Source: Macrostomum lignano (lineage: Eukaryota). Taken from it: DNA of 64,000 bases. The translations under genes were made by a program, and so were the position numbers. How positions within the stretch are numbered: position 1 is the stretch's first letter; every line of letters begins with the position of its first letter. Below are positions 8,839 through 43,466 of this stretch, piece after piece. The stretch is from the NCBI GenBank assembly GCA_002269645.1, contig NIVC01003244.1, positions 97,219 through 161,218 of the forward strand, given 5' to 3'. Below the pieces are notes generated by a model. The model saw only the letters and a list, made by a program, of their open reading frames with translations. It ran no database searches and was not told where the DNA came from.

Positions 8839-11800
8839 TGGCCTGGGGTTCTAGCCAGCTGACTAAGCTCCACGCTGCCAAAGGAGCGACACTCTGTCTG
8901 CAAATAAATTTAAAGCATTGCGTCAGTCATTCTGATGAAGATTTCTGAGGTGTAAAGGCCAGGCCTCATTCTGATCCAGGAGCCCTGGATGCGCAACGGT
9001 AAGTTGCCCAACATTCCTTCTGGCTACTCTGATTTTTATGTGTGTGGCCCGGGGAACAGCCGCCCTAGAGCGGCTATCCTCGCTGCCAGCCATCTCCAGG
9101 CTTGGCTGAGAACTGATCTCTCAGATGAAGACCTCTGCGTCATCCAATCTAATCATCTCTCTCCGCGGACGTGTCTCGTTGCTTCGATTATTTCAGGCGA
9201 CAGAGACCCTGCACCTGAAAGTCTACTGCGCCTTGCGCAGTACTGCGAGTCCCAGAACGCTGAGCTGTGCTTAGGGGGGCGACCTCAACGCGCACCACAA
9301 GCACTGGGGCAGCAAAGACACCAATACTAGAGGGGAGGAGCTTCTGGCCCTTATCTCTAACACAAACCTCATGCTCTGCAACCGCGGTAGCACTCCTACC
9401 TTTAACAATGGCAGATGGACTGAGGTCCTCGATGCCACACTCGCTACCCCAAGACGCTTTGACAGAGTTGAGAAGTGAAGTCTGGTCTAAGGAGCCCTCC
9501 CTCCTCCCTGTCTGACTACTACTTTATCGCCTTTAAAATCGTGGACACTAAACTCCAGTCCTCGATCACTTGGATGCGTAACATCCGCAACACTGATTGG
9601 GCAGCCTATAAGGCTACCCTTGATCTGCACCTGCAGGAACTCACGGACTTACGTCCGATTGAGACCTGCGAGGATGTGGACTATGTGGCTGAGACGCTGA
9701 CAGGTTGCATTATTGCAGCCTATGAAGCGGCCTGCCCTGTCCGTGCCTACAAAGCCCTCTCCGTGCCTCGGCGCCGTGGTGGAACCCGGAGCTGGGGAAA
9801 CTCAGACGGAAGGCCAAAAGCCTTCACCGGCGTACCATGAAGACCGGAAACCAGGAGGACATGGAACTTTTCCGACAAGCCTCCCACAACTTCAAATCTA
9901 AGTGCGCAAGGCCAAGGAATGTAAATGGCGCCAATTCTGCAATGAGTTGGATTAAGACAGACCTACTTCTAGGCTTGTCAAGGCCCTTACAATGGACAAA
10001 ATATCCAAATTAGCCATGATCGGAAGAGAAGACCCTGAAGAAGTGATTCAGCATATGCTCAGCACATTCTTCCCGAGGGTACCCACTGCTAGATCGGAAC
10101 CCAACCATTCGATGGATGGAGCCACCCTAGCGGCGGGCATTATCTCTGAAGACTTAATCGCTCGTGCGGTCAGAACCTTCAAGCCCTTCAAATCTCCTGG
10201 ACCTGATGGTATCTACCCTGTTCTTCTTCGTGAAGCAGCCAAGATACCCTCGTTCTTGAGACTTACCCGCAATCTCACGTGGGCCTCTATCCAGATGGGA
10301 TACGTTCCCAAGTGCTGGACCGAAGCTCGGGTAGTCTTCATTCCCAAACCTGGGAAGGTGACTACCAGAGCGTCAAGGCCTTTAGGCCAATTAGCTTAAC
10401 GTCAGCAATACTTAAGCTCACTGAGAGGCTTATTCTCTGGCGGCTGCTTTCATGCGAGCTGACAGCAATGCACCTCAGCAATCACCAGCACGCCTTCCGT
10501 ACCGGGAGGTCGACTGACAGCGCCCTGCATGCGATAGTCGAGAACATTGAACGGGCGGTAATGGATGACGGTTACGCCCTGGCTCTTTTTTTCGAAATTT
10601 TTGGCGCCTTCGACAACGTTATCTTTGAAGGGTTTCAAGGGCCCTTAAAAACCGCAAAGCTCACGCTACCCCCATACGGTGGATCATGTACATGATCTCT
10701 AACCTTACGGTCACTGCCCAACTTCTTTGGCAAACTGCCTCCGCCAGAGTTTGTAAGGGCGGACCCCAAGGTGAAGTCCTCACCCCGACGCTCTGGAACC
10801 TGGTCATGGACGCTCTTCTGGGCGACTCCCGACCTGATCCCGTCTTCAAAGTCGGGTATGCTGACGACGTCACTGCCATTGTGGCAGAGCCGTCCCCAGC
10901 ACGCTCAGGGATCTGATGCAGAGCTTTATCCGCAAAGCAGAATCCTGGGCCAATGACAACGGTCTGGAACTCTCTGAGCCCAAAACTGTTGCCATTATGT
11001 TCACCAGCAGAATACGCTGGAACATACGACCTCTGCAGTTATACGGCAGAGATATTGCCTTCGCGCACCAGACCAGATGTCTCGGGGTCATACTTGACCA
11101 CCGGCTCAACTGGTCCTTCCACGTGAAAGCAAAAGCCAAGCATGCCTCAGTCATCCTGGCCCAGCTCCGACGAGCACTTGGCACTTCTTGGGGTCTTTCT
11201 CCAAAGCGGCTTTGGTGGATCTACACTTCCGACCTGCCATTACGTACCTGCCTCGGTTGTCTGGGTTGCGCTACCCAGGTCAAAAGCCATGCAGATTTGC
11301 TCAACACGATCCAGGACAGAGCGTGTAGGCTTATCTGCAACGCCACCAGGTCCACGCCCTTTGCCGGCATGGGGGCCTTCCTTAATCTACCGCCTCTTGA
11401 CCTCTTCTCAGGGGTGAGGCGGCTAGAACGACGCGGCGTCTTAATTGATGCCGGTCAAATTCCTTTACATGAGAGCACCTGCTAAGCGGAACCTTGTCCC
11501 GCATAGCGATCTGTGCCTCAACTTCTCAACGAGTGTCAGGCCAATCGCGTCTTCACCGATGCATTGCCTCAACAACGCTCAACCTGAGACAACGCTACTC
11601 CGTAGCTTTCGACTCGCGCGATACCATCAATGACCACTGGAACCATGGGGAGCTTCACTGCTACACCGATGGTTCTAAGAAGTCAGCCAAAACCGGTTTT
11701 GGTGTTGGAATCTTCCTGAACGGGAGGGTCATCGCAACCCACGCTCAGTACACTGGGGTCAACTCCAGTGTCTTCCAAAGTGAAGTTCTCGCCATCAGCT

Positions 11801-29900: not shown

Positions 29901-31746
29901 CTAATGCTGGCGCCTCATGGTGCTGGCGCCTCTAATGCTGGCGCCTCATGGTACTGGCGCCTCATGGTGCTGGCGCCTCTAATGCTGGCGCCTCATGGTG
30001 CTGGCGCCTCTAATTCTGGCGCCTCTAATGCTGGCGCCTCACGGTGCTGGCGTTACTTGAATAAAATGGCGCCTTCAAGGGGGCGCCAACCTTCCCCCCT
30101 AATACATGTAGAACCCTCGCAGCGAGATGTCAGATGAAGAGGAGAGACAGGAACTAAGGCGGCAGCTATGAGTTGTTGCACTGCACTGACTGTCAAGGGA
30201 CACAAAAAAGTGCGAAGAGTCACGCACGCAGAAACTCTCCCTAGGCCTAGGAGCCCCATCGTGTTGTGCAGCCCCCAAGGACTCTGAATGCCAGCCGTCA
30301 GGAGGGTCACTCAGCCATGCGGGACTGGCTGTCACTTTCTCTCATATGCAAGGCCTCTAGCAGCAGGCAGTGCGAGAGGGAAGTGGGATTGGAAATCAAA
30401 TTACAGAGGCTCCAGGGCTAGACGGCATCCTGACAGCAGTGACAGCTGATGGGGGAGAGGGTGAATGTCGCTGCCTCTGCACTCTCCCTGCGGCTCTGGA
30501 GTGTCGCTAAAGCCGGCGGCACTCCACTGAATTTGCACTGCGCGAATTGGCACTTGGGAAATATGATTACGGTATGATGCAGTTTGGATGCTGGGAATAA
30601 TAGCACTTGCTAATTAGGATTATTAGATGAAAATATTGTGGATGGATGGGTGGGGGATGAATGGGTGGATGGATGGGTGAATGGTTGGGTGGGGGGTGGG
30701 TGGACGGGTGAATGGTGGGCGGATGGATGGGTGGTAGATGGATGGGTGGGGGATGGAGGGGTGAATTGATGGATGGATGGGTGGATGGATGGGTGGGTGG
30801 GGGATAGATGGATGGATGGATGGATGGATGGATGGATGGATGGATGGGTGGATGGGTGGGGGATGGATGGATGGATGGATGGATGGATGGATGGATGGAT
30901 GGGTGGATGGGTGGGGGATGGATGGATGGATGGATGGATGGATGGATGGATGGGTGGGTGGGGGATGGATGGATGGATGGATGGATGGATGGATGGATGG
31001 ATGGATGGATGGGTGGATGGGTGGGGGATGGATGGATGGATGGATGGATGGATGGGTGGATGGGTGGGGGATGGATGGATGGATGGATGGATGGATGGAT
31101 GGATGGATGGGTGGGTGGATGGGTGGGTAGATGGGTGGATGGATGGGTGGGTGGATGGATGGATGGATGGATGGATGGATGGATGGATGGGTGGGTGGAT
31201 GGGTGGGTAGATGGGTGGATGGATGGGTGGGTGGATGGATGGATGGATGGATGGATGGATGGATGGATGGATGGGTGGGTGGATGGGTGGGTAGATGGGT
31301 GGATGGATGGGTGGGTGGATGGGTGGGTGGATGGATGGATGGATGGATGGATGGATGGGTGGATGGGTGGGGGGATGGATGGATGGGTGGATGGGTGGGT
31401 AGATGGGTGGGTGGAAGGATGGATGGGTGGATGGGTGGGTAGATGGGTGGGTGGAAGGATGGATGGGTGGATGGATGGGTAGATGGATGGCTGGATGAGG
31501 TGGATAGATGCGCAGCCATGAAGACAGATCGGCACATGGACAGATGAGGCAGCTACACAGACCCCAGCTCACCGCAGCATAGTAGTTGGCCCGGCTGTCG
31601 GATTTAGTCAGGGAGAGCCGCTCCTCTCCTATAGCAAACAGAGTCTCCAGCTGGTTAGGGAAAAATATCCTCAAGATGATGTAGGCCAGCAGGGCAATCA
31701 CAATCACAGTGAGCAGTGAGATCACAACGGCGGCCCAGGGCTGCAT
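17972..31746 (-). CDS. SYT12: Synaptotagmin-12-like (N-terminal TM, C2A, C2B; 7 coding exons)
   Basis: Exons 31746-31573, 28818(or 28815)-28662, 20931-20657, 20215-20003, 19903-19780, 18999-18866 and 18145-17972. All are GT-AG with consistent phases (0,1,0,0,1,0). Motifs [43 protein letters not shown] and GHVIIG...[20 protein letters not shown] match SYT12 as recalled. Confidence 0.9.
18175..18655. repeat. Pyrimidine-rich 12-bp repeat (CTCTCCCTC(C/T)GT)n, SYT12 intron 6
   Basis: Direct periodicity abutting the exon 7 acceptor. Confidence 0.9.
19040..19520. repeat. 41-bp minisatellite (GGAGGGGAATCTCTGGAGGGCGGCGGTACATCAAAGGGATT), SYT12 intron 5
   Basis: About 11 variably degenerate units. Confidence 0.9.
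20390..20635. repeat. Degenerate ATAGATCTAGACTCTAAT repeat, SYT12 intron 3
   Basis: Recurrent AGATCTAG palindromic cores. Confidence 0.75.
20991..21737. repeat. 24/25-bp minisatellite (CTCTGACAGTCGTCTTTTGTCCCA / ...TTTTGGCGCCA), left part, SYT12 intron 2
   Basis: Direct periodicity; interrupted by LINE copy 2. Confidence 0.95.
22227..24060 (+). pseudogene. LINE copy 2 ORF1 (DUF4780-like), with a nonsense codon and a MITE insertion
   Basis: ATG at 22227. In-frame TAG at 22413-22415, then the frame continues into ORF 22491-23720. After removing the MITE and correcting the G10 run (23589-23598) it ends [25 protein letters not shown] (TAG 24058-24060), which resembles the copy 1 C-terminus. Confidence 0.75.
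23602..23898. mobile_element. hAT-type MITE (297 bp) nested in LINE copy 2 ORF1
   Basis: Perfect 14-bp TIRs CATACATGCGCAAC / GTTGCGCATGTATG. Perfect 8-bp TSD GGGGGCGG (23594-23601 and 23899-23906). Subterminal GGCCGA and GTCGCATTTT repeats. Confidence 0.9.
24063..27725 (+). pseudogene. LINE copy 2 ORF2: APE endonuclease, reverse transcriptase, RNase H, CCHC finger
   Basis: [94 protein letters not shown]...H....C. Lesion near the 5' end and an in-frame TAG at 25425-25427. Confidence 0.95.
27838..28375. repeat. 24/25-bp minisatellite, right part
   Basis: Same units as 20991-21737, degenerating towards 28375. Confidence 0.95.
28960..29350. repeat. 30-bp minisatellite (GACTCTAGATTGAAAATCTGGTCATTTTAT), SYT12 intron 1
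   Basis: About 13 units. Confidence 0.95.
29755..30050. repeat. 15-bp minisatellite (GGCGCCTCATGGTGCT/GGCGCCTCTAATGCT-type), SYT12 intron 1
   Basis: Two alternating unit variants. Confidence 0.9.
30640..31505. repeat. (GGAT)n/(GGGT)n compound microsatellite, SYT12 intron 1
   Basis: Direct; it produces the spurious HPSI and MDGW ORFs. Confidence 0.97.
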
Positions 31747-33514: not shown

Positions 33515-33595
33515 CATACACACACAGACAGAAAAACAAACAGACACACACACAGACAGACATAGGCAGGCAGACAGACAGACAGACAGACAGAC

Positions 33596-33632
<37 letters not shown>

Positions 33633-33653
33633 CACACAGACAGACAGACAGAC

Positions 33654-33708
<55 letters not shown>

Positions 33709-33715
33709 TACAGAG

Positions 33716-33795
<80 letters not shown>
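33515..33795. repeat. (CAGA)n microsatellite
   Basis: Direct. Confidence 0.97.
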
Positions 33796-34589
33796 AACAA
33801 TATTGCCGCTGGCTGTACTCCCTAAAAATGTAGTGGGTTATTAATCATACTACTGAGTGAAAGGCGCCAGTAGTATTATTAGAGAGAATTGTAACGAATA
33901 CAAGTCGTTATATTGTAATATTTGCAGTACACGGAACAGCTGTGAGCACAGTGGATATAACATAGATTAAAACATGCAGTAAAACTGAAGTAACAAAACT
34001 TTTAGATAATAAAACTTACTAATTAAAGTTACAAGCTATTAGCTAAAAAAGTTCAGGAAACCAACTGTATTATTAAACTCAAATTATTACAAAATTGTCT
34101 AATAAACAATATGTGTAGGTGTTTGTTTATTAATTTATTTCTGACGCATAGGATATCGATGTATTTAAGATTTTAACGACGGCTGGGTTTACGAAAAGAA
34201 CTTTAGCAATGCACTTTTCAAGACAATTTCCGTTATAGAACTTTATACTGTTAAATCATTATTGATACATTTTATTGTGAAACTGAGCTCATTGAAAAGC
34301 ATATTGTTACAATAATACTTACACAAATGTATGCATCTCAATACGATAAAACATGATAAAATATACTTGATAGGTCAAAAATTTTAACACGCTACAAATC
34401 ATCTTCCGTTTACATGCAAGCACGCGAAGTTGGGCTATATTATTGCATCACTGAGTGTTTTATGATCAAGAGATACTAAACAAATTGATTTTATTATAAA
34501 AAGTCAATAATAAAAATTGATCATTTTAATAGCCACGAGAGAAGAAAGGAATTCCTTTGAAAATAAAAAAGATCAAGGGAAAAAGGAAA

Positions 34590-35445
34590 GGACGAAAAGA
34601 GGGGAAAAAGGCGACAGAGGGGAAAAGCGGAAAGAGGGGAAAAGGGGGAAAGAGGGGAGGAGGGGAAATGGGGGAAGAGGAGAACAGGGGGAAAGAGGGG
34701 AAAAGGGGGAAAGAGGGGAGGAGGGGAAATGGGGGAAGAGGGGAGGAGGGGAAAAGGGGAAGAGGGGAGGAGGGGAAATGGGGGAAGAGGGGAACAGGGG
34801 GAAAGAGGGGAAAAGGGGGAAGAGGGGAGGAGGGGAAATGGGGGAAGAGGGGAACAGGGGGAAAGAGGGGAAAAGGGGGAAGAGGGGAGGAGGGGAAATG
34901 GGGGAAGAGGGGAACAGGGGGAAGAGGGGAGGAGGGGGAAGAGGGGAGGAGGGGAAATGGGGGAAGAGGGGAACAGGGGGAAAGAGGGGAAAAGGGGGAA
35001 GAGGGGAGGAGGGGAAATGGGGGAAGAGGGGAACAGGGGGAAAGAGGGAAAAGGGGGAAGAGGGGAGGAGGGGAAATGGGGGAAGAGGGGAACAGGGGAA
35101 AAGGGGGAAGAGGGGAGGAGGGGAAATGGGGAAGAGGGGAGGAGGGGAAAAGGGGGAAGAGGGGAGGAGGGGAAATGGGGGAAGAGGGGAACAGGGGGAG
35201 AGGGAACAGAGGGGGAGGGAAAAGAGGGAGAGTGGAAAAGAGGGGAAAGAGGGGGGAAAGAGGGGAGAGGGAAAAGAGGGGAGAGGGGAAAAGAGGGGAG
35301 GGGAGAGGGAAAAGAGGGGAAAGAGGGGGAAAAGAGGGGAGAGGGAAAAGAGGGAAGAGGGGAAAGAGGGGAAAAGAGGGGAGAGGAGAAAGAGGGGGAA
35401 AGGCGGGAGAGGAGAAAAAGGAAATGGGTAAAAGTGGAAAAGGGC
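34590..35445. repeat. Polypurine (G/A) low-complexity tract with internal repeated blocks
   Basis: Almost pure A/G with recurrent GGGGAGGAGGGGAAATGGGGGAAGAGGGGAACAGGGGG blocks. Confidence 0.95.
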
Positions 35446-35794
35446 AATAATAGTAAGTTACTGACCAACAAGTTTCATAACTCCTTCAATAATGATATAA
35501 GAAGAACGAGGCCCATTATATCAACATGTATATTTGATTATTTAACGATCCAGGCAGACAGAAAATGAAAATCTCTGGACTCGTAAATGTATAGCAGGAG
35601 AAAAATTCAGAGTACACACAATACTTTACATTCTACATGTTACTCTGCAACAAGGCAGGTGCTAAAAAACCTTAAAAAGCAAGTTTTTACCCAGGTTAAA
35701 AACAATGCACAATAGAATTAGAAGAGAAATAAATTATTATTAATTAATGAAAATAGATAAGCAATAAAAATCGATAATTGATTTATTAATTCGC

Positions 35795-36628
35795 TCAGTT
35801 CGCGGAGTGATCAGCCACGCAGAAAAGTCGTTGCAACAAGCCGGAAGATTTCTGCTGCTGCTGCCTGGCGCCATCCGCGCCTCTTTTAGCCATCAACTTG
35901 CAGCCGCTCTGGTCGCTCACCTTTGAGCTTTTGGATTTCTTGCCTCGCGACTTGCCAGACTTGCCGGACGCCGCCGCCCCAGTAGCCAGGGCTTCTTGAA
36001 CACTCGAACCGGCCCAGATGGCCGTGTCGAACACTTCTTTGAGACATTTCTGAGTCAGCGCGCTGCACTCGATGTACTCCAGTGCGCCAAGCTGTCTGCA
36101 GGCCTTCTCGGCCTCCTCTTTACTAACCGGTGCAGAATTCTTCAACGACAAGTCTAACAATATCGACGCGTCGTCGCGTTGATCGGATTTCAAACCAATG
36201 AGCAGCCGAGCGGCGTGCGCGGGAGCGTGTTCATTCAGCTCCGGCAGCCACTTGGCTTTCAAGGACTCCAGCGACTCCGGCTGGGCGACTGCGAAGCACA
36301 ACAGAAAGACGTGCGCGTCCGGATAGGCTAAGGGGCGGATCTGCTCGAAATGGTCCAAGCCGGGAGTGTCGCACAGAGCCACCCGGCACCAGCGGTGATC
36401 AACGCGAACATCAATAGAATAAGTGTCATACGTAGTTGGCGTATAGGCATTGGGGAAGCCGTTAGTTGTGTAGCTGATCAGGCTGGCTGTTTTGCCTACG
36501 CAGGAATCTCCAACTGCGACGCATTTCAAAGTAACTGGCGGCTGCTGAGGACTGGTGGCTGAGGCGCCATCTGACACAACAGAAGAGTCCTGCTGTTGCT
36601 GCTGTTGCTGCTGTTGCTGCTGGTCCAT
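35795..36628 (-). CDS. Atypical Rho GTPase of the RhoU/RhoV (Wrch-1/Chp) subfamily, intronless
   Basis: 277-aa ORF with KCVAVGDSCVGKT, SYTTNGFP..Y.PT, LCDTPGL, FLLCFAV..PESL, KW.PEL, GLKSD and ECSALTQKCLKEVFDTAIWAG (RhoU/V-type). Poly-Q N-terminus. C-terminus LFCVADHSAN has no CAAX box. Confidence 0.92.
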   Translation of the reverse strand: MDQQQQQQQQQQQDSSVVSDGASATSPQQPPVTLKCVAVGDSCVGKTASLISYTTNGFPNAYTPTTYDTYSIDVRVDHRWCRVALCDTPGLDHFEQIRPLAYPDAHVFLLCFAVAQPESLESLKAKWLPELNEHAPAHAARLLIGLKSDQRDDASILLDLSLKNSAPVSKEEAEKACRQLGALEYIECSALTQKCLKEVFDTAIWAGSSVQEALATGAAASGKSGKSRGKKSKSSKVSDQSGCKLMAKRGADGARQQQQKSSGLLQRLFCVADHSAN

Positions 36629-36845
36629 TAAGAGGCAGCCAAATTAACAGCGGTGAGTTTCTTTGATAAGTCTGGCACACTCCTGTCTCTGATAGTGGAG
36701 AGGTATTTTGATCTGGCTGAAATTGTATAATTGAAACAAATTAATAATTTAGGATTTACAATAAATGTCTTCATCAAAGAAAAAACTCGAGATCTTACTC
36801 CCTTGCTAACAAGCCTAAATCTTAACTTTTAAATAGAATAAAGTA

Positions 36846-39800
36846 TGAGATGCCATGGCTTTCTGGGGAGTTGCTGAGATGCCAATTGACTCAATGGGGA
36901 GTTGCTGAGATGCCAATTGGCTCAATGGGGAGCTGCTGAGATGCCAATTGACTCAATGGGGAGTTGCTGAGATGCCAATTGACTCAATGGGGAGTTGCTG
37001 AGATGCCAATTGACTCAATGGGGGAGCTGCTGAGATGCCAATTGACTCAATGGGGGAGCTGCTGAGATGCCAATTGACTCAATAGGGAGTTGCTGAGATG
37101 CCAATTGACTCAATGGGGAGTTGCTAAGATGCCAATTGACTCAATGGGGAGCTGCTGAGATGCCACTTGACTCAATGGGGAGTTGCTGAGATGCCATGGC
37201 TTTCTGGGGGAGTTGCTGAGATGCCAGTTGACTCAATGGGGGAGTTGCTGATATGCCAATTGACTCAATGGGGGAGTTGCTGAGAAGCCGATTGACTCAA
37301 TGGGGAGTTGCTGAGATGCCGATTGACTCAATGGGGAGTTACTGAGATGCCATGGCTTTCTGGGGGAGTTGCTGAGATGCCAATTGACTCAATGGGGGAG
37401 TTGCTGAGATGCCGATTGACTCAATGGGGAGTTGCTGAGATGCCAATTGACTCAATGGGGAGTTGCTGAGATGCCATGGCTTTCTGGCGGAGTTGCTGAG
37501 ATGCCAATTGACTCAATGGGGAGTTGCTGAGATGCCATGGCTTTCTGGGGGAGTTGCTGAGATGCCAATTGACTCAATGGGGGAGTTGCTGAGATGCCGA
37601 TTGACTCAATGGGGAGTTGCTGAGATGCCATGGCTTTCTGGGGGAGTTGCTGAGATGCCAATTGACTCAATGGGGAGTTGCTGAGATGCCATGGCTTTCT
37701 GGGGAGTTGCTGAGATGCCAATTGACTCAATGGGGAGTTGCTGAGATGCCAATTGACTCAATGGGGGAGTTGCTGAGATGCCAATTGACTCAATGGGGGA
37801 GTTGCTGAGATGCCGATTGACTCAATGGGGAGTTGCTGAGATGCCATGGCTTTCTGGGGGAGTTGCTGAGATGCCAATTGACTCAATGGGGAGTTGCTGA
37901 GATGCCAATTGACTCAATGGGGAGTTGCTGAGATGCCAATTGACTCAATGGGGGAGTTGCTGAGATGCCGATTGACTCAATGGGGAGTTGCTGAGATGCC
38001 AATTGACTCAATGGGGAGTTGCTGAGATGCCATGGCTTTCTGGGGAGTTGCTGAGATGCCAATTGACTCAATGGGGGAGTTGCTGAGATGCCGATTGACT
38101 CAATGGGGAGTTGCTGAGATGCCATGGCTTTCTGGGGGAGTTGCTGAGATGCCAATTGACTCAATGGGGAGTTGCTGAGATGCCATGGCTTTCTGGGGGA
38201 GTTGCTGAGATGCCAATTGACTCAATGGGGAGTTGCTGAGATGCCAATTGACTCAATGGGGGAGTTGCTGAGATGCCAATTGACTCAATGGGGGAGTTGC
38301 TGAGATGCCGATTGACTCAATGGGGAGTTGCTGAGATGCCAATTGACTCAATGGGGAGTTGCTGAGATGCCATGGCTTTCTGGCGGAGTTGCTGAGATGC
38401 CGATTGACTCAATGGGGAGTTGCTGAGATGCCATGGCTTTCTGGGGGAGTTGCTGAGATGCCAATTGACTCAATGGGGGAGTTGCTGAGATGCCGATTGA
38501 CTCAATGGGGAGTTGCTGAGATGCCGATTGACTCAATGGGGAGTTGCTGAGATGCCAATTGACTCAATGGGGAGTTGCTGAGATGCCATGGCTTTCTGGG
38601 GGAGTTGCTGAGATGCCAATTGACTCAATGGGGAGTTGCTGAGATGCCATGGCTTTCTGGGGGAGTTGCTGAGATGCCAATTGACTCAATGGGGGAGTTG
38701 CTGAGATGCCGATTGACTCAATGGGGAGTTGCTGAGATGCCATGGCTTTCTGGGGGAGTTGCTGAGATGCCAATTGACTCAATGGGGAGTTGCTGAGATG
38801 CCATGGCTTTCTGGGGGAGTTGCTGAGATGCCAATTGACTCAATGGGGAGTTGCTGAGATGCCAATTGACTCAATGGGGGAGTTGCTGAGATGCCAATTG
38901 ACTCAATGGGGGAGTTGCTGAGATGCCGATTGACTCAATGGGGAGTTGCTGAGATGCCAATTGACTCAATGGGGAGTTGCTGAGATGCCATGGCTTTCTG
39001 GCGGAGTTGCTGAGATGCCGATTGACTCAATGGGGAGTTGCTGAGATGCCATGGCTTTCTGGGGGAGTTGCTGAGATGCCAATTGACTCAATGGGGGAGT
39101 TGCTGAGATGCCGATTGACTCAATGGGGAGTTGCTGAGATGCCGATTGACTCAATGGGGAGTTGCTGAGATGCCAATTGACTCAATGGGGAGTTGCTGAG
39201 ATGCCATGGCTTTCTGGGGGAGTTGCTGAGATGCCAATTGACTCAATGGGGAGTTGCTGAGATGCCAATTGACTCAATGGGGGAGTTGCTGAGATGCCAA
39301 TTGACTCAATGGGGGAGTTGCTGAGATGCCGATTGACTCAATGGGGAGTTGCTGAGATGCCATGGCTTTCTGGGGGAGTTGCTGAGATGCCAATTGACTC
39401 AATGGGGAGTTGCTGAGATGCCATGGCTTTCTGGGGGAGTTGCTGAGATGCCAATTGACTCAATGGGGAGTTGCTGAGATGCCAATTGACTCAATGGGGA
39501 GTTGCTGAGATGCCAATTGACTCAATGGGGGAGTTGCTGAGATGCCGATTGACTCAATGGGGAGTTGCTGAGATGCCAATTGACTCAATGGGGGAGTTGC
39601 TGAGATGCCATGGCTTTCTGGGGGAGTTGCTGAGATGCCAATTGACTCAATGGGGGAGTTGCTGAGATGCCGATTGACTCAATGGGGAGTTGCTGAGATG
39701 CCATGGCTTTCTGGGGGAGTTGCTGAGATGCCAATTGACTCAATGGGGAGTTGCTGAGATGCCATGGCTTTCTGGGGGAGTTGCTGAGATGCCAATTGAC

Positions 39801-40232
39801 TCAATGGGGAGTTTCTGAGATGCCAATTGACTCAATGGGGGAGTTGCTGAGATGCCAATTGACTCAATGGGGGAGTTGCTGAGATGCCGATTGACTCAAT
39901 GGGGAGTTGCTGAGATGCCAATTGACTCAATGGGGAGTTGCTGAGATGCCATGGCTTTCTGGCGGAGTTGCTGAGATGCCAATTGACTCAATGGGGGAGT
40001 TGCTGAGATGCCGATTGACTCAATGGGGAGTTGCTGAGATGCCGATTGACTCAATGGGGAGTTGCTGAGATGCCATGGCTTTCTGGGGGAGTTGCTGAGA
40101 TGCCAATTGACTCAATGGGGAGTTGCTGAGATGCCATGGCTTTCTGGGGGAGTTGCTGAGATGCCAATTGACTCAATGGGGGAGTTGCTGAGATGCCGAT
40201 TGACTCAATGGGGAGTTGCTGAGACGCCATGG
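36846..40232. repeat. 3.4-kb satellite of 29-32-bp units (GGGGAGTTGCTGAGATGCC+AATTGACTCAAT or +ATGGCTTTCT) with higher-order structure
   Basis: Direct periodicity. ORFs 38348-38536 and 38966-39154 translate identically, 618 bp apart. Confidence 0.97.
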
Positions 40233-41149
40233 CTCAAAGCGGAGTTGCTTGACCCTCAAAAAAGAAAAAAACTGACAACTTAGCCCTAAAATCCAGATAT
40301 CAAAGTAAATGCTTTTCAAATTTCCAAATCAAAGAACTGAGACCGGAACAAATCTTACACAATAGCCAGGCAATTTTGAGATCCTTGCTGCTCCTTCAGT
40401 AATTGGCAATTTCAGAAAAAACTTGAAAAAATTAAAAGAACACTAACAAAAGCATTTACGAAGTAATTAATAAACAATAAAGTTAAGTAAATCAATAAAT
40501 AAGCAAGCATTAAATAAAGAAACAGCTGTTCTAAAAATATTTTAAAGTCAACTACTAATAGTAATATATAAATTAGTTTACACGACAGCAAAATTAAAAG
40601 CAACAATCTGCTTTTGAACTATGGAGCTTAGTAATAAAATGCTTTATAAATTATAATAGATGCCATGGCAACTAAGTCATTGGTAAATTAAATAAATCAT
40701 ACATGGCCAAGTGAAAAAATCAGCATTACGCTGGAGATTACAAAAACTCAAAAAATCATTAAATAAGAGAAATATAAAGCACGCTTGACATACTACTGAT
40801 AAGCTTATAAAATGCTCATTAATATTAGAATTTTAAATAGCTATATTGACTATATTGATAAGCTGTTTATTGCGTTACAAATGTATAAAAATTATAGCAT
40901 ACACAATACTCAGGTACAAAAAAATACATTAAAAATTAAATATTTTGCAATTAATAAATATCTACAATCGGCAATACATGTTGGTTGAAGCGAAAACAAT
41001 TGCCATTATTTTTGGAGGACTAGAAGTGTGCTGCAGCCTTTGGCAAATAAGACTAACTGCTGTTGGCTCAGTGGAAGGGGAATGATTAGAGAACTTTTAA
41101 AATACAAAATGAGAGACCAGCAGAGGATAGCAATGTGGGTGATTAAAGA

Positions 41150-41546: not shown

Positions 41547-43383
41547 TTACTCAAACTTTGTCTGCTGTTGTTGATGAAGCTTTCGCAAGCTGTAGCCGCC
41601 GCTACCCGCAGAGCAGCTCTCGGCTTCAACTAGCAGGCTCTCTTCTAAGCCAGCAGTAGCGGCCGGCGATTCCACCACTACAGACATCTGGCTGCGCAGA
41701 CAACGAGACGACGGTTTCGTTGAAGTTGTCGACGATGTCGAGGCGGTTTCTTGAACGCTGGCCGACCGGAGCAGCCGTCGAGGCCGGCCGCCGCCAGATA
41801 TCAAAGCGGCGGCGGCAGCGGCCGCGGCAGCTCTGCGACTCTGGCGTTTAGTAGCCTTCGGGCGGTGCACGACTTTCCTGACGGAGCCTGGCGTAGCCGC
41901 CGATCCTGACGCTGTGGATGCCGGCGTAGAATTCGCCGGCTTAGTTGGCGTCAGCGGCATCGCTTGAATTGGCCGGAAATGCTGATTGAGCTCCGGCCCG
42001 ATGCTGTCAACCGAGTCGCAGCGCAGGTAGGCGGCGGCGGTGGCGGAGAACAGGCGACAACGATTGTCGACAATTGCCGAAGACTCGTCTGAGTCGTGAC
42101 GGCGAATTGGCGGAGCGGCAAGCGGGTCGCCTGGCTCGGACTGGGGCTCGTCTGGGATCGCCGCTGGGAGGGGGTGATTTTTTATGACGATTTTTATTGC
42201 GGAGATTTATTAGGAGCGATTCTTTAAGGGCGATTTTTAATAGAGCGATTCTTTAGGGACGATTCTTCAAGGGCGATTTTAAGGGCGATTCTTTTTGGGG
42301 CGATTCTTTTTGGGGCGATTCTTTAGGGGCGATTTTTAATGCGGGGGTTCTTAAGAGGCGAGTTTTAATGGGGCGATTCTTTAGGGGGCGATTTTTAATT
42401 GGGAGATTCTTTAGGGGGTGATTTTTATTGGGGAGATTTTTAGTGGTGATATTTATTTGGACGATTCTTTAGGGGACGATTTTAATGGGGATTCTTTAGG
42501 GACGATTTTTAATGGGGTGATTCTCAAAGGCTGGAATTTTTAATTGCGGAGATTTTTAGGGGGCGATTTTTAATGTGAAGATTCTTTAGGGGGCTATTTT
42601 TTAATGGCCGATTTTTTAGAAAGGAGTTTTAATTAGGGGGGGGGGGTTTAGAGGCGATTTTTTGGAAGCGATTTTTGAGGGCGGTTTTTAAAAGAGAATT
42701 TTGAGGTGTTCCTAAGGAAGGAGAATTTTTTACAAAGTCATTCTCATGGTGATAGATTATAGCAATCTTTTCAAAGAAGTGGCGATTTTTCAGAGGCCAC
42801 CACAGCACTCACCGTCAGCCAGAGCGATATCCTCAGCCATGCTCTGCTCCGCCGGTGACATCGCTGTCGCCGTAGCTTCGGCCAGACGCAGTCGGCGAAT
42901 CAACGCCAACGAAGCCGCCTCCTCGGCCGCCTGCTGTGCCCGACGCTCGGCAGTCAAGGCGTCCACCGCGGCCTGCCACTCAGCTTGCAGCTCGCCCGGC
43001 TGCGCCAGCTGACGCCGCTCGGCCCCGTTGTCGGCGCTGCCGCCAGCCTCGACAACTTCAACTAGCCGCGGGTGCAGCTGTTGAATGCGCCGCCATTTGT
43101 CCTGGTTGACCAGCAGCTCCGGATTGCGAGCTCGGCGCATCCACACGGACAGCCGGCGGCGGCACAGGGGGCAGACCAGGCTGCACCAGTCGCCTGAGCA
43201 GGCCTGCATCAGGCAGCCCAGACACAGCTCGTGTTGGCATGGCAACAGCACCGGCTTCACCATCACCGACAGGCAGACTGGGCAGGTGAACGATTCTAAA
43301 TCCGATGATTCTGACGAGGCCGATGATGAAGAGCTTGACGATTCGATTGGAGTCTGGTGCTGCTTCTTTCTGCGAGTTTTCAT
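41547..43383 (-). CDS. RNF168: RNF168/RNF169-like RING E3 ubiquitin ligase (2 coding exons)
   Basis: Exon 43383-42813 (phase 1, GTGAGT) has RING CPVC...LPCQHELCLGC...CPLCRRRLSVWMR...LVNQDKW..IQ..HP and UMI/MIU-like PGELQAEW...ERRAQQAAEEAASLALIRRL. Exon CAG|42163-41547 has CDSVDSIGPELNQHFRPIQAMPLTPTK and a terminal YSLR LRM-like motif. Confidence 0.85.
42175..42700. repeat. Degenerate ~17-19-bp repeat (GGGGCGATT(C/T)TTTA) filling the RNF168 intron
   Basis: Recurrent GGCGATT motifs. Confidence 0.8.
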
Positions 43384-43466
43384 GCTTTGTTTTATTGCGG
43401 AAGCAGAAACAGATGGAGGTGGAGATGCAGTTACCCTGGTGCATCTAGAGCTGATGGCAGTTCTGC

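What the first reader, a model, noticed from the sequence alone, without database searches (positions are those of the whole stretch)
35795..36628. RhoU/V-like GTPase naturally carrying G12S, A59P and Q61L equivalents
The P-loop reads GDSCVGKT (Ser42, codon TCC at 36505-36503, equivalent to Gly12) and switch II reads DTPGL (Pro89 = Ala59; Leu91, codon TTG at 36358-36356, = Gln61). Q61L and G12 substitutions are the classic hydrolysis-dead activating changes. Vertebrate RhoU/V keep G12 and Q61, whereas Rnd and RhoH are GTPase-deficient through other residues. This would be an independently evolved, constitutively GTP-bound Rho regulated by expression or turnover. Switch I also has Tyr at Phe37, and there is no CAAX box. 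The ORF is intact and intronless, possibly a retrocopy.
Basis: partly seen in the sequence, partly recalled or inferred. Interest (0 to 1): 0.7.

Follow-up and report, generated by a model that had tools for sequence, protein, structure and literature searches.

The report
Flatworm Rho GTPase lacking catalytic residues
This is a real, conserved gene of the flatworm Macrostomum lignano for a very divergent RhoU/V-like signalling switch whose three key 'off-switch' residues are naturally replaced, so it is probably always 'on', much like the known Rnd and RhoH proteins of vertebrates.

Summary
Window 35795-36628 (- strand) is an intact 277-aa, single-exon ORF for a Rho-family GTPase of Macrostomum lignano. 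It has Ser42, Pro89 and Leu91 at the Gly12, Ala59 and Gln61 positions, plus Tyr67 (Phe37) and Leu146 (Thr115). Three syntenic genomic copies share these residues. They differ by 21 synonymous and 1 conservative change (dN/dS 0-0.04), so this is a selected gene, not an error or pseudogene. The G domain models confidently as a Rac/Cdc42-like fold.

RhoU/V assignment is only moderately supported: best PDB hit, 70% NJ bootstrap, and +13.5 bits for a RhoU HMM over a Rac/Cdc42 HMM. The branch is very long (51% identity or less to anything else).

The interpretation needs correcting. Rnd3 is substituted at exactly the same three positions (GDSQCGKT, DTSGS), and RhoH at 12 and 61. RhoU/V-type proteins of nematodes (including CHW-1), a scorpion, copepods and a locust carry subsets of these changes. 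A RhoU-like Cys motif (LFCVA) is retained near the C-terminus.

GTPase deficiency is inferred, not shown. Verdict: a new member of a known kind (constitutively GTP-bound atypical Rho), of modest interest.

The parts
35795..36628 (-). Complete single-exon CDS, 277 aa, of a divergent RhoU/V-like Rho GTPase. It is the third genomic copy of the gene annotated elsewhere as M. lignano BOX15_Mlig003733g2 and BOX15_Mlig034410g2.
   Evidence: (Pfam Ras 2e-36)
36590..36622 (-). N-terminal poly-Gln tract (res 3-13, CAG/CAA). Its length varies among the three copies (11, 9 and 8 Gln). It lies in a 32-aa N-terminal extension predicted to be disordered.
36488..36511 (-). G1/P-loop GDSCVGKT: Ser42 at the Gly12 position and Cys43 at the Ala13 position. 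Lys46 and Thr47 are retained.
36419..36466 (-). Switch I / effector loop TNGFPNAYTPTTYDTY. Phe58 occupies the F28 position (not the Tyr of vertebrate RhoU). Thr65 (T35), Asp68 (D38) and Tyr70 (Y40) are retained. Thr66 (V36), Tyr67 (F37) and Thr69 (N39) are changed.
   Evidence: PMC13236570
36335..36370 (-). G3 / switch II DTPGLDHFEQIR: Pro89 (A59), Leu91 (Q61), Glu95 (D65), Gln96 (R66) and Ile97 (L67). Asp87 and Gly90 are retained. The preceding Cys86 and Phe94 are RhoU-type residues.
36182..36193 (-). G4 LKSD: Leu146 replaces the Thr that is invariant in 51/51 homologues (Rac/Cdc42 T115, Ras N116). Lys147 and Asp149 are retained.
36140..36181 (-). Rho insert region (res 150-163). It aligns without gaps to the RhoU and Cdc42 insert and is modelled as a helix (154-162).
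36056..36067 (-). G5 CSAL (the ECSAL motif), canonical.
35921..35965 (-). Polybasic stretch GKSGKSRGKKSKSSK in the C-terminal extension, which is predicted to be disordered.
35813..35827 (-). LFCVA motif containing Cys270. It resembles the RhoU C-terminal palmitoylation motif (for example Octopus ...GWKKFFCVF), but five further residues (DHSAN) follow it.
   Evidence: PMC6959303
35782..35787 (-). AATAAA hexamer starting 8 nt after the stop codon; a candidate poly(A) signal.
   Evidence: sequence only
36717..36722 (-). TTTCAG acceptor-like site after an AT-rich tract, about 89 nt upstream of the ATG. It is a candidate cis- or trans-splice acceptor. The gene is named 'g2' of its transcriptional unit in the other two copies.
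   Evidence: PMC5730564; inference only

Best explanation
A lineage-restricted, fast-evolved RhoU/V-type atypical Rho GTPase of Macrostomum lignano.

Shown:
- It is an intact gene under purifying selection, present in three syntenic copies of this neopolyploid genome.
- It has a complete Rho G-domain fold, Rho insert included.
- The residues needed to bind Mg2+ and guanine nucleotide are retained: K46, T47, T65, D87, G90, K147, D149 and SAL.
- The two residues needed for hydrolysis are replaced: the Gln61 equivalent, which positions the attacking water, is Leu; the Gly12 equivalent, which leaves room for a GAP arginine finger, is Ser. Ala59 is Pro.

Inferred:
- The protein binds GTP, but hydrolyses it very slowly and is insensitive to conventional RhoGAPs. 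It therefore sits constitutively in the GTP form, as Rnd1-3 and RhoH do.
- Its output is set by transcription, turnover and localisation.
- Membrane attachment is probably through the polybasic stretch plus S-acylation of Cys270 in the RhoU-like LFCVA motif, not through prenylation.
- Effector coupling is probably to CRIB or Par6-type partners, because T35, D38 and Y40 equivalents are kept. Specificity may be altered by V36T, F37Y and N39T.
For: - Identity and residues.
- Organism and three copies in conserved synteny (Tfb2, 401-aa gene, Rho, C2-domain gene).
- All three copies have identical motif residues.
- 21 synonymous versus 1 conservative nonsynonymous difference; dN/dS 0.00-0.04 at dS 0.04-0.10; binomial p = 1e-12. 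The only indels are in-frame changes in poly-Q length, while the flanks carry many indels.
- S42 (TCC) and L91 (TTG) are each two nucleotide steps from any Gly or Gln codon, so the changes are old.
- AF2 pLDDT is above 90 over residues ~33-215. Foldseek gives TM 0.92-0.96 and rmsd 1.1-1.5 A to Rac1, Rac3 and Cdc42.
- RhoU/V affinity: best PDB hit is RhoU 2q3h. NJ bootstrap is 70% for monophyly with RhoU-type sequences. The protein matches RhoU at 6 of 19 diagnostic sites and Rac/Cdc42 at 2. The RhoU HMM scores 213.2 bits against 199.7 for the Rac/Cdc42 HMM, and still +6.5 to +8.3 with the motif regions masked. The C-terminal Cys motif is RhoU-like.
- Precedent that these positions make Rho proteins GTPase-deficient: Rnd3 sequence; RhoH and Rnd reviews; CHW-1 Ala18.
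- The deposited gene models for the other two copies derive from an RNA-seq-based transcript assembly (PMC5730564).
Against: - No biochemical data exist. Ser at position 12 is a milder change than Val.
- Pro59 alone is compatible with a normal Gln61 in a whole copepod clade.
- Leu146 at the otherwise invariant T115 position could weaken nucleotide binding rather than merely block hydrolysis.
- RhoU/V placement is only moderate: identity to Cdc42 (49%) is nearly equal to identity to RhoU (49-51%).
- No transcript contig with this protein was found in the searchable assemblies. The gene IDs appear in no searched paper or supplement.
- The N-terminal extension lacks the multiple PxxP motifs of vertebrate RhoU.
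- The conserved Trp of the RhoU/V tail is absent.
Confidence: 0.6

Rival explanations
1. It is not a RhoU/V orthologue. It is a fast-evolving duplicate of Cdc42 or Rac (or an orphan Rho lineage) that converged on some RhoU-like residues. The prediction of GTPase deficiency would still hold.
For: Identity to human Cdc42 (48.9%) and to an oomycete Rac (50.6%) is about the same as to RhoU (47-51%). 11 of 19 RhoU-diagnostic sites are neither RhoU-like nor Rac/Cdc42-like. 30% of bootstraps break RhoU-type monophyly. The HMM preference is only +13.5 bits, against +32 to +57 for other divergent RhoU-types. A clam Cdc42-like protein (P0237) has independently acquired A12, S59 and L61.
Against: The best PDB hit is RhoU. 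The majority of bootstraps, the HMM preference (which persists with motifs masked), Cys86, Phe94, the TNG[FY]P and ALTQK.LKEVFD signatures, and the long C-terminal extension ending in a RhoU-like Cys motif instead of CAAX all point to RhoU/V.
Confidence: 0.25
2. It is a pseudo-GTPase or a non-canonical cycler. Either nucleotide binding is compromised (Leu at T115, Pro59, Cys13), so it acts as a nucleotide-independent scaffold, or GTP is still hydrolysed with help from a dedicated GAP that supplies the catalytic residue in trans, as RapGAP does for Rap, which lacks Gln61.
For: Leu146 replaces a residue invariant in 51/51 homologues that links G4 to the P-loop. Twelve deviations at highly conserved columns cluster in the nucleotide-contacting and switch regions. 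The Rap/RapGAP precedent rests on established knowledge, not on a test made here.
Against: All direct phosphate-, Mg2+- and guanine-binding residues are kept: K46, T47, T65, D87, G90, K147, D149 and SAL. Other Rho proteins carry Leu at this G4 position (LVGLK.D in P0082, P0089, P0090 and P0117). No candidate dedicated GAP is known.
Confidence: 0.12
3. It is a non-functional retrocopy or pseudogene, or the odd residues are sequencing or assembly errors.
For: The CDS is a single exon, whereas M. lignano genes average 4.9 introns (PMC5730564) and Lingula RhoU spans 8.9 kb. No transcript contig was retrieved.
Against: Three independently assembled syntenic copies have identical unusual codons. dN/dS is 0-0.04 with 21 synonymous differences, and the only indels are in-frame. 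There is no poly(A) tract or other retrocopy hallmark after the 3' end. No parental paralogue above 51% identity exists. The other two loci carry transcript-derived gene models.
Confidence: 0.03

Closest known systems
Rnd3/RhoE (and Rnd1, Rnd2), vertebrate GTPase-deficient Rho proteins
   Same: Substituted at exactly the same three positions: Rnd3 has Ser12, Ser59 and Ser61 (GDSQCGKT, DTSGS; PDB 1m7b), against Ser, Pro and Leu here. Rnd proteins also have N- and C-terminal extensions, and are constitutively GTP-bound and controlled by expression and turnover (PMC13236570).
   Different: Not orthologous: 39% identity, and Rnd3 groups with RhoA in the tree. Rnd proteins are farnesylated through a CAAX box, which this protein lacks. 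The residue at 61 is Leu, not Ser.
RhoH
   Same: Non-Gly at 12 and non-Gln at 61, GTPase-deficient, and regulated by protein level (PMC2980477; PMC13236570).
   Different: RhoH is a vertebrate, haematopoietic-specific protein with a CAAX box. It was not in the sequence sets compared here.
C. elegans CHW-1 and other nematode RhoU/V orthologues
   Same: They belong to the same subfamily candidate and naturally lack Gly12. CHW-1 has Ala18, is thought to be partly active, and A18G/A18V mutants change its activity (PMC5982818). Relatives retrieved here carry S12+K61 (P0069), S12+N61 (P0080, Panagrolaimus-like), A12+R61 (Ditylenchus P0215) and A12+S59 (Strongyloides P0180). They have Phe or Tyr at the F28 position and Thr at V36, as here. 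In 27% of bootstraps they are the sister group of the Macrostomum protein.
   Different: None has Leu61 or Pro59. Their C-terminal tails end in ...MTRKLI or ...MTRRFV without the Cys motif. Identity to the Macrostomum protein is only 45-47%.
Vertebrate RhoU (Wrch-1) and RhoV (Chp)
   Same: Best structural-database match (2q3h, 4e-53). Shared features: an extended N- and C-terminus, no CAAX box, a Cys-containing hydrophobic C-terminal motif after a basic stretch, and Cys before DT and D.F in switch II (PMC6959303).
   Different: RhoU keeps G12, A59 and Q61 and is 'atypical' through fast nucleotide exchange, attributed to Tyr at the F28 position (PMC13236570). The flatworm protein has Phe there. 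It lacks the multiple PxxP motifs and the tail Trp, and its Cys motif is followed by 5 extra residues.
Engineered or oncogenic Q61L and G12 mutants of Rac1, Cdc42 and Ras
   Same: The same substitution (Gln61 to Leu) that is used to lock Rac1 and Cdc42 in the GTP state. Several PDB entries hit are such mutants, for example 1nf3 Cdc42 Q61L and 8q0n Rac1 Q61L.
   Different: Here the substitutions are natural, fixed and under purifying selection, in a background with about 50% divergence.

Membership tests
Rho family of Ras-superfamily small GTPases | Ras-type G domain with G1-G5 nucleotide-binding motifs | tested here: met
   Pfam PF00071 at 2.1e-36. G1 GxxxxGKT, T65, DxxG, xKxD and SAL are present. 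Catalytic G12 and Q61, and T115, are substituted.
Rho family of Ras-superfamily small GTPases | Rho insert helix between G4 and G5 | tested here: met
   Ungapped alignment through the insert against RhoU and Cdc42. The AF2 model has a helix at 154-162. TM 0.92-0.96 to Rac and Cdc42 structures over 174-179 columns.
RhoU/V (Wrch/Chp) subfamily | Phylogenetic placement within the RhoU/V clade | tested here: inconclusive
   In the NJ tree it is a long branch at the base of RhoU-type sequences. Monophyly has 70% bootstrap support, and 27% of replicates put it sister to the nematode CHW-1-like proteins. No ML tool was available.
RhoU/V (Wrch/Chp) subfamily | Higher profile similarity to RhoU/V than to Rac/Cdc42, and shared signature residues | tested here: met
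   RhoU HMM 213.2 bits against 199.7 bits for Rac/Cdc42; +6.5 to +8.3 bits with the P-loop and switches masked. It matches RhoU at 6 of 19 diagnostic sites and Rac/Cdc42 at 2. The margin is modest compared with other divergent RhoU-types (+32 to +57).
RhoU/V (Wrch/Chp) subfamily | N-terminal extension with proline-rich PxxP SH3-binding motifs (PMC6959303) | tested here: not met
   A 32-aa extension is present, but it is poly-Q/Ser-rich with a single minimal PQQP (res 27-30). CHW-1 also lacks the extension (PMC5982818), so this feature is not universal in the subfamily.
RhoU/V (Wrch/Chp) subfamily | C-terminal extension ending in a palmitoylated Cys motif (CFV) after basic residues, with no CAAX prenylation (PMC6959303) | tested here: inconclusive
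   There is a ~70-aa tail with a polybasic stretch and ...GLLQRLFCVADHSAN, compared with Octopus ...GWKKFFCVF. The Cys motif is present but 5 residues follow it, and the tail Trp is missing. Amphioxus and many insect RhoUs also have residues after the Cys motif. Acylation cannot be tested here.
RhoU/V (Wrch/Chp) subfamily | Fast intrinsic nucleotide exchange, attributed to Tyr at the F28-equivalent position (PMC13236570) | tested here: not met
   The residue is Phe58 (NGFP), as in insect and some nematode RhoU-types. The exchange rate itself cannot be tested here.
RhoU/V (Wrch/Chp) subfamily | Binding to PAK/CRIB effectors through the effector loop | not testable with these tools
   T35, D38 and Y40 equivalents are retained; V36T, F37Y and N39T are changed.
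GTPase-deficient, constitutively GTP-bound atypical Rho proteins (functional class: Rnd1-3, RhoH) | Non-Gly at position 12 and non-Gln at position 61 (plus non-Ala at 59 in Rnd) | tested here: met
   Ser42, Pro89 and Leu91. Rnd3 has Ser, Ser, Ser at the same columns.
GTPase-deficient, constitutively GTP-bound atypical Rho proteins (functional class: Rnd1-3, RhoH) | No measurable intrinsic or GAP-stimulated GTP hydrolysis; GTP-bound in cells | not testable with these tools
   This needs recombinant protein assays.
Rnd subfamily (orthology) | Sequence or phylogenetic affiliation with Rnd1-3, and a CAAX farnesylation box | tested here: not met
   39% identity to Rnd3. Rnd3 branches with RhoA, far from the Macrostomum protein. 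There is no CAAX box.

The most novel reading that the evidence does not exclude
Macrostomum (or a wider flatworm lineage) has converted its RhoU/V-type GTPase from a fast-cycling switch into a hydrolysis-dead, permanently GTP-bound signalling module. It did so by changing the same three positions (12, 59, 61) that define vertebrate Rnd proteins. This would be an independent, convergent origin of an 'Rnd-like' always-on Rho in a protostome, possibly replacing the canonical RhoU altogether, in a model animal where it can be tested by RNAi and transgenesis.
Probability: 0.4. Interest if true: 0.45.

Novelty: new member of a known kind. Interest (0 to 1): 0.3.

Why it matters
Constitutively GTP-bound 'atypical' small GTPases are increasingly seen as a regular regulatory design rather than an oddity (PMC13236570). 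Almost all functional work, however, is on vertebrate Rnd and RhoH and on C. elegans CHW-1.

This gene is a natural triple substitution (S12, P59, L61) held under strong purifying selection, in a genetically tractable flatworm. It could show how a Rho switch evolves into an expression-controlled module. It could also show which compensating changes accompany the loss of hydrolysis; candidates are the diverged switch II, Leu at T115 and Tyr at F37.

The survey made here also shows that loss of Gly12 or Gln61 has happened repeatedly in RhoU/V-type proteins of protostomes: nematodes, a scorpion, a locust, and Pro59 in copepods. None of the literature I searched here mentions this beyond CHW-1. 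The result does not change any principle.

Tried and rejected
1. Sequencing or assembly error: rejected, because three separately assembled copies have identical codons.
2. Pseudogene or dead retrocopy: rejected by dN/dS of 0-0.04 and in-frame-only indels. No poly(A) remnant follows the 3' end.
3. Search for orthologues carrying the same residues:
   - The word-indexed search and the exhaustive phmmer search of 1.84 billion representatives found nothing above 51% identity outside M. lignano.
   - A scan for proteins sharing the derived residues found only scattered, evidently convergent cases; the best, locust P0136, shares 5 of 18.
4. Search for a canonical RhoU in M. lignano or other flatworms, using Octopus RhoU as query: none among the 120 hits listed out of 1439. 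This is uninformative because the list is truncated.
5. Direct expression evidence: no Logan or transcript contig carries the protein. The gene IDs Mlig003733 and Mlig034410 are absent from full texts and from the supplements of two M. lignano papers.
6. Literature search on flatworm Rho-family evolution returned nothing relevant.
7. The bacterial-type promoter and terminator scan is irrelevant for a eukaryotic gene and was ignored.
8. Rnd orthology was considered and rejected.
9. P0171, a 'natural' Leu61 hit, turned out to be an engineered PDB construct and was discarded.
Full report
**Observation.** Window 35795-36628 on the minus strand is an uninterrupted ATG-to-TGA ORF of 277 codons. An in-frame stop lies six codons upstream of the ATG. 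The translation contains the following motifs (coordinates):
- P-loop GDSCVGKT (res 40-47)
- effector loop TNGFPNAYTPTTYDTY (55-70)
- switch II DTPGLDHFEQIR (87-98)
- G4 LKSD (146-149)
- G5 CSAL (188-191)

HMMER alignments to human RhoU (PDB 2q3h) and Cdc42 place Ser42, Cys43, Tyr67, Pro89 and Leu91 opposite Gly12, Ala13, Phe37, Ala59 and Gln61. In a 52-sequence alignment these columns are G in 48/51, A in 46/51 and Q in 49/51 of the other sequences. The protein departs from the consensus at 12 of the 65 columns that are at least 90% conserved, the highest count in the set (median 2). Five of these departures are in switch II. One, Leu146, is at a Thr that is invariant in all 51 homologues.

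**Organism, copies and selection.**
- The protein is 100% identical over the shared length to GenBank PAA72496.1, 'hypothetical protein BOX15_Mlig003733g2' of the free-living flatworm Macrostomum lignano.
- Its 90% cluster has three members, of 275, 274 and 277 aa. The 277-aa member is the window's own copy.
- The two other copies lie on different contigs of assembly GCA_002269645.1. They share the gene order Tfb2, a 401-aa protein without Pfam hits, the Rho gene, and a C2-domain gene.
- M. lignano is a neopolyploid with two subgenomes (PMC10733133 abstract), which explains the multiple copies.
- All three copies have identical motif residues. At the protein level they differ only in poly-Gln length and by L34V.
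- At the DNA level there are 22 substitution columns, 21 synonymous and one conservative. This gives dN/dS of 0.00-0.04 at dS of 0.04-0.10 (binomial p about 1e-12). The only indels are in-frame CAG/CAA units, whereas the flanks carry many indels.
- Ser42 (TCC) and Leu91 (TTG) are each two nucleotide steps from any Gly or Gln codon, so the substitutions are old.
- Sequencing error and pseudogene status are thus excluded.
- The deposited annotation derives from a genome-guided RNA-seq transcript assembly cut at experimentally mapped trans-splice and poly(A) sites (PMC5730564). The existence of the two gene models is therefore indirect evidence of transcription.
- I could not obtain direct read-level evidence. 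No transcript contig carries the protein, and the gene IDs appear in no searched text or supplement.

**Fold.** An AlphaFold2 model built on a 52-sequence alignment has pLDDT above 90 over residues ~33-215 and low confidence in both tails. It superposes on Rac1, Rac3 and Cdc42 crystal structures with target-normalised TM of 0.92-0.96 and rmsd of 1.1-1.5 A over 174-179 columns. It includes a helix at 154-162 that corresponds to the Rho insert. Rho-family membership is secure (Pfam Ras 2e-36).

**Which Rho?**
- The best solved-structure match is human RhoU (4e-53), but only marginally ahead of Cdc42 and Rac.
- An exhaustive phmmer search of 1.84 billion cluster representatives found no protein more than 51% identical outside M. 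lignano. By contrast, canonical RhoU is 57-79% identical between octopus and animals from fish to arthropods. This is a very long branch.
- A bootstrapped NJ tree puts it at the base of the RhoU/V-type group, which comprises canonical RhoU, copepod RhoU-like and nematode CHW-1-like proteins. Monophyly has 70% support. In 27% of replicates it is sister to the nematode proteins.
- Of 19 sites that distinguish canonical RhoU from both Rac1 and Cdc42, it matches RhoU at 6 and Rac/Cdc42 at 2, and is unique at 11.
- A RhoU-type HMM scores it 13.5 bits above a Rac/Cdc42-type HMM, and 6.5-8.3 bits above with the P-loop and switches masked. Other divergent RhoU-types score +32 to +57, and a clam Cdc42-like protein scores -14.
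- The C-terminal extension carries a polybasic stretch and ends ...GLLQRLFCVADHSAN. This resembles the RhoU tail (...GWKKFFCVF in Octopus) with five extra residues and without the Trp. Amphioxus and many insect RhoUs also have residues after the Cys motif.
- The N-terminal extension is poly-Q/Ser-rich, with only one minimal PxxP.
- The F28-equivalent residue is Phe, not the Tyr held responsible for fast cycling of vertebrate RhoU (PMC13236570). Insect and some nematode RhoU-types also have Phe.
- I therefore call it 'RhoU/V-like' with about 65-70% confidence.

**Mechanism (inference).**
- The residues that bind phosphate, Mg2+ and guanine are retained: K46, T47, T65, D87, G90, K147, D149 and SAL.
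- The catalytic Gln is Leu, and the Gly that accommodates the GAP arginine finger is Ser. These are the positions whose mutation locks Ras, Rac and Cdc42 in the GTP form. This is established knowledge, and several PDB hits are such Q61L or G12V mutants.
- The most likely behaviour is a GTP-bound, GAP-insensitive protein controlled by expression, turnover and localisation. It would be anchored by its basic stretch and an S-acylated Cys270, and would signal through CRIB or Par6-type effectors, since T35, D38 and Y40 are kept.
- Leu at T115 and the diverged switch II leave room for weakened nucleotide binding or for a non-canonical GAP. I rate those rivals at about 0.12.

**Comparison with what is known.**
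PDB chain 1m7b_A (Rnd3/RhoE) reads GDSQCGKT and DTSGS, that is Ser at 12, 59 and 61, the very same three positions. RhoH is altered at 12 and 61 (PMC2980477; PMC13236570).
- Within the RhoU/V group, C. elegans CHW-1 has Ala at position 12 and has been analysed genetically (PMC5982818).
- In the sequences retrieved here I also found:
  - nematode relatives with S12+K61, S12+N61, A12+R61 and A12+S59;
  - a scorpion RhoU with the identical P-loop GDSCVGKT but Gln61;
  - a whole copepod clade with DTPGQ (Pro59) and CAAX boxes;
  - a Schistocerca gregaria RhoU-like protein with DTAGL, whose congener has Gln;
  - a clam Cdc42-like protein with A12, S59 and L61.
- The combination S12+P59+L61 in a RhoU/V-like protein was unique in my data. 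The phenomenon itself is recurrent and its functional class is well known.

**Retrocopy question.**
- The CDS has no intron, whereas M. lignano genes average 4.9 introns and Lingula RhoU spans 8.9 kb. The three neighbouring genes also span more DNA than their coding length.
- There is no poly(A) remnant after the 3' end, and no parental paralogue above 51% identity.
- All three polyploid copies share the intronless structure.
- An ancient retroposition or intron loss is possible but cannot be decided here.

**Verdict.** This is a new, strongly diverged member of a known kind: GTPase-deficient atypical Rho proteins, most probably of RhoU/V descent. It is of modest interest, mainly as a tractable natural example of convergent evolution toward an always-on Rho.

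Noticed in passing
window 36864-40249: A 31-bp tandem repeat (consensus TGGGGAGTTGCTGAGATGCCAATTGACTCAA, about 109 copies, 86% matches) starts 236 bp upstream of the Rho ATG. In the two other genomic copies (L001 about 9478-9784; L002 about 9377-9871) the same array is only about 0.3-0.5 kb, so it has expanded roughly 7-10 fold in this copy. It lies between the Rho gene and the upstream 401-aa gene, and produces spurious repeat ORFs (for example 37452-37730).
   Followed up: partly
window 34596-35444: A purine-rich (GA) degenerate tandem repeat (periods 8, 17 and 25, about 850 bp) lies 350 bp downstream of the Rho stop codon. It gives long spurious Gly/Lys/Arg/Glu-rich and Pro/Ser/Leu-rich ORFs on both strands (34517-35568). 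There is also an (ACAG)n microsatellite at 33520-33795.
   Followed up: no
window ~41550-43440 (-), ~45900 onward (-), and ~31746 downward (-): Neighbouring genes, inferred by mapping the annotated copies onto the window: a 401-aa protein with no Pfam hit upstream of the Rho gene, a TFIIH Tfb2 subunit gene beyond it, and a C2-domain gene downstream whose first exon matches ORF 30610-31746. The order is conserved in all three copies. The Rho gene is labelled 'g2' of its transcriptional unit, hinting at a polycistronic, trans-spliced precursor.
   Followed up: partly
proteins P0015, P0026, P0040 and about 30 related hits (not in the window): Copepod RhoU-like GTPases (Acartia, Tigriopus, Neocalanus and many metatranscriptome contigs) uniformly have Pro at the Ala59 position (DTPGQ). 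Unlike other RhoU-types, they end in a CAAX box (for example KKKKCSIL).
   Followed up: partly
proteins P0136 and P0420 (not in the window): The desert locust Schistocerca gregaria RhoU-like protein has Leu at the Gln61 position (DTAGL), while the S. serialis cubense orthologue (76% identical) has Gln. This could be a very recent natural Q61L or an annotation or isoform issue.
   Followed up: no
protein P0237 (Ruditapes philippinarum, not in the window): A clam 'Cdc42 homolog' with a CAAX box carries Ala12, Ser59 and Leu61 (GDACVGKT, DTSGL). This is another independent natural loss of all three positions, in a Cdc42-type rather than a RhoU-type protein.
   Followed up: no
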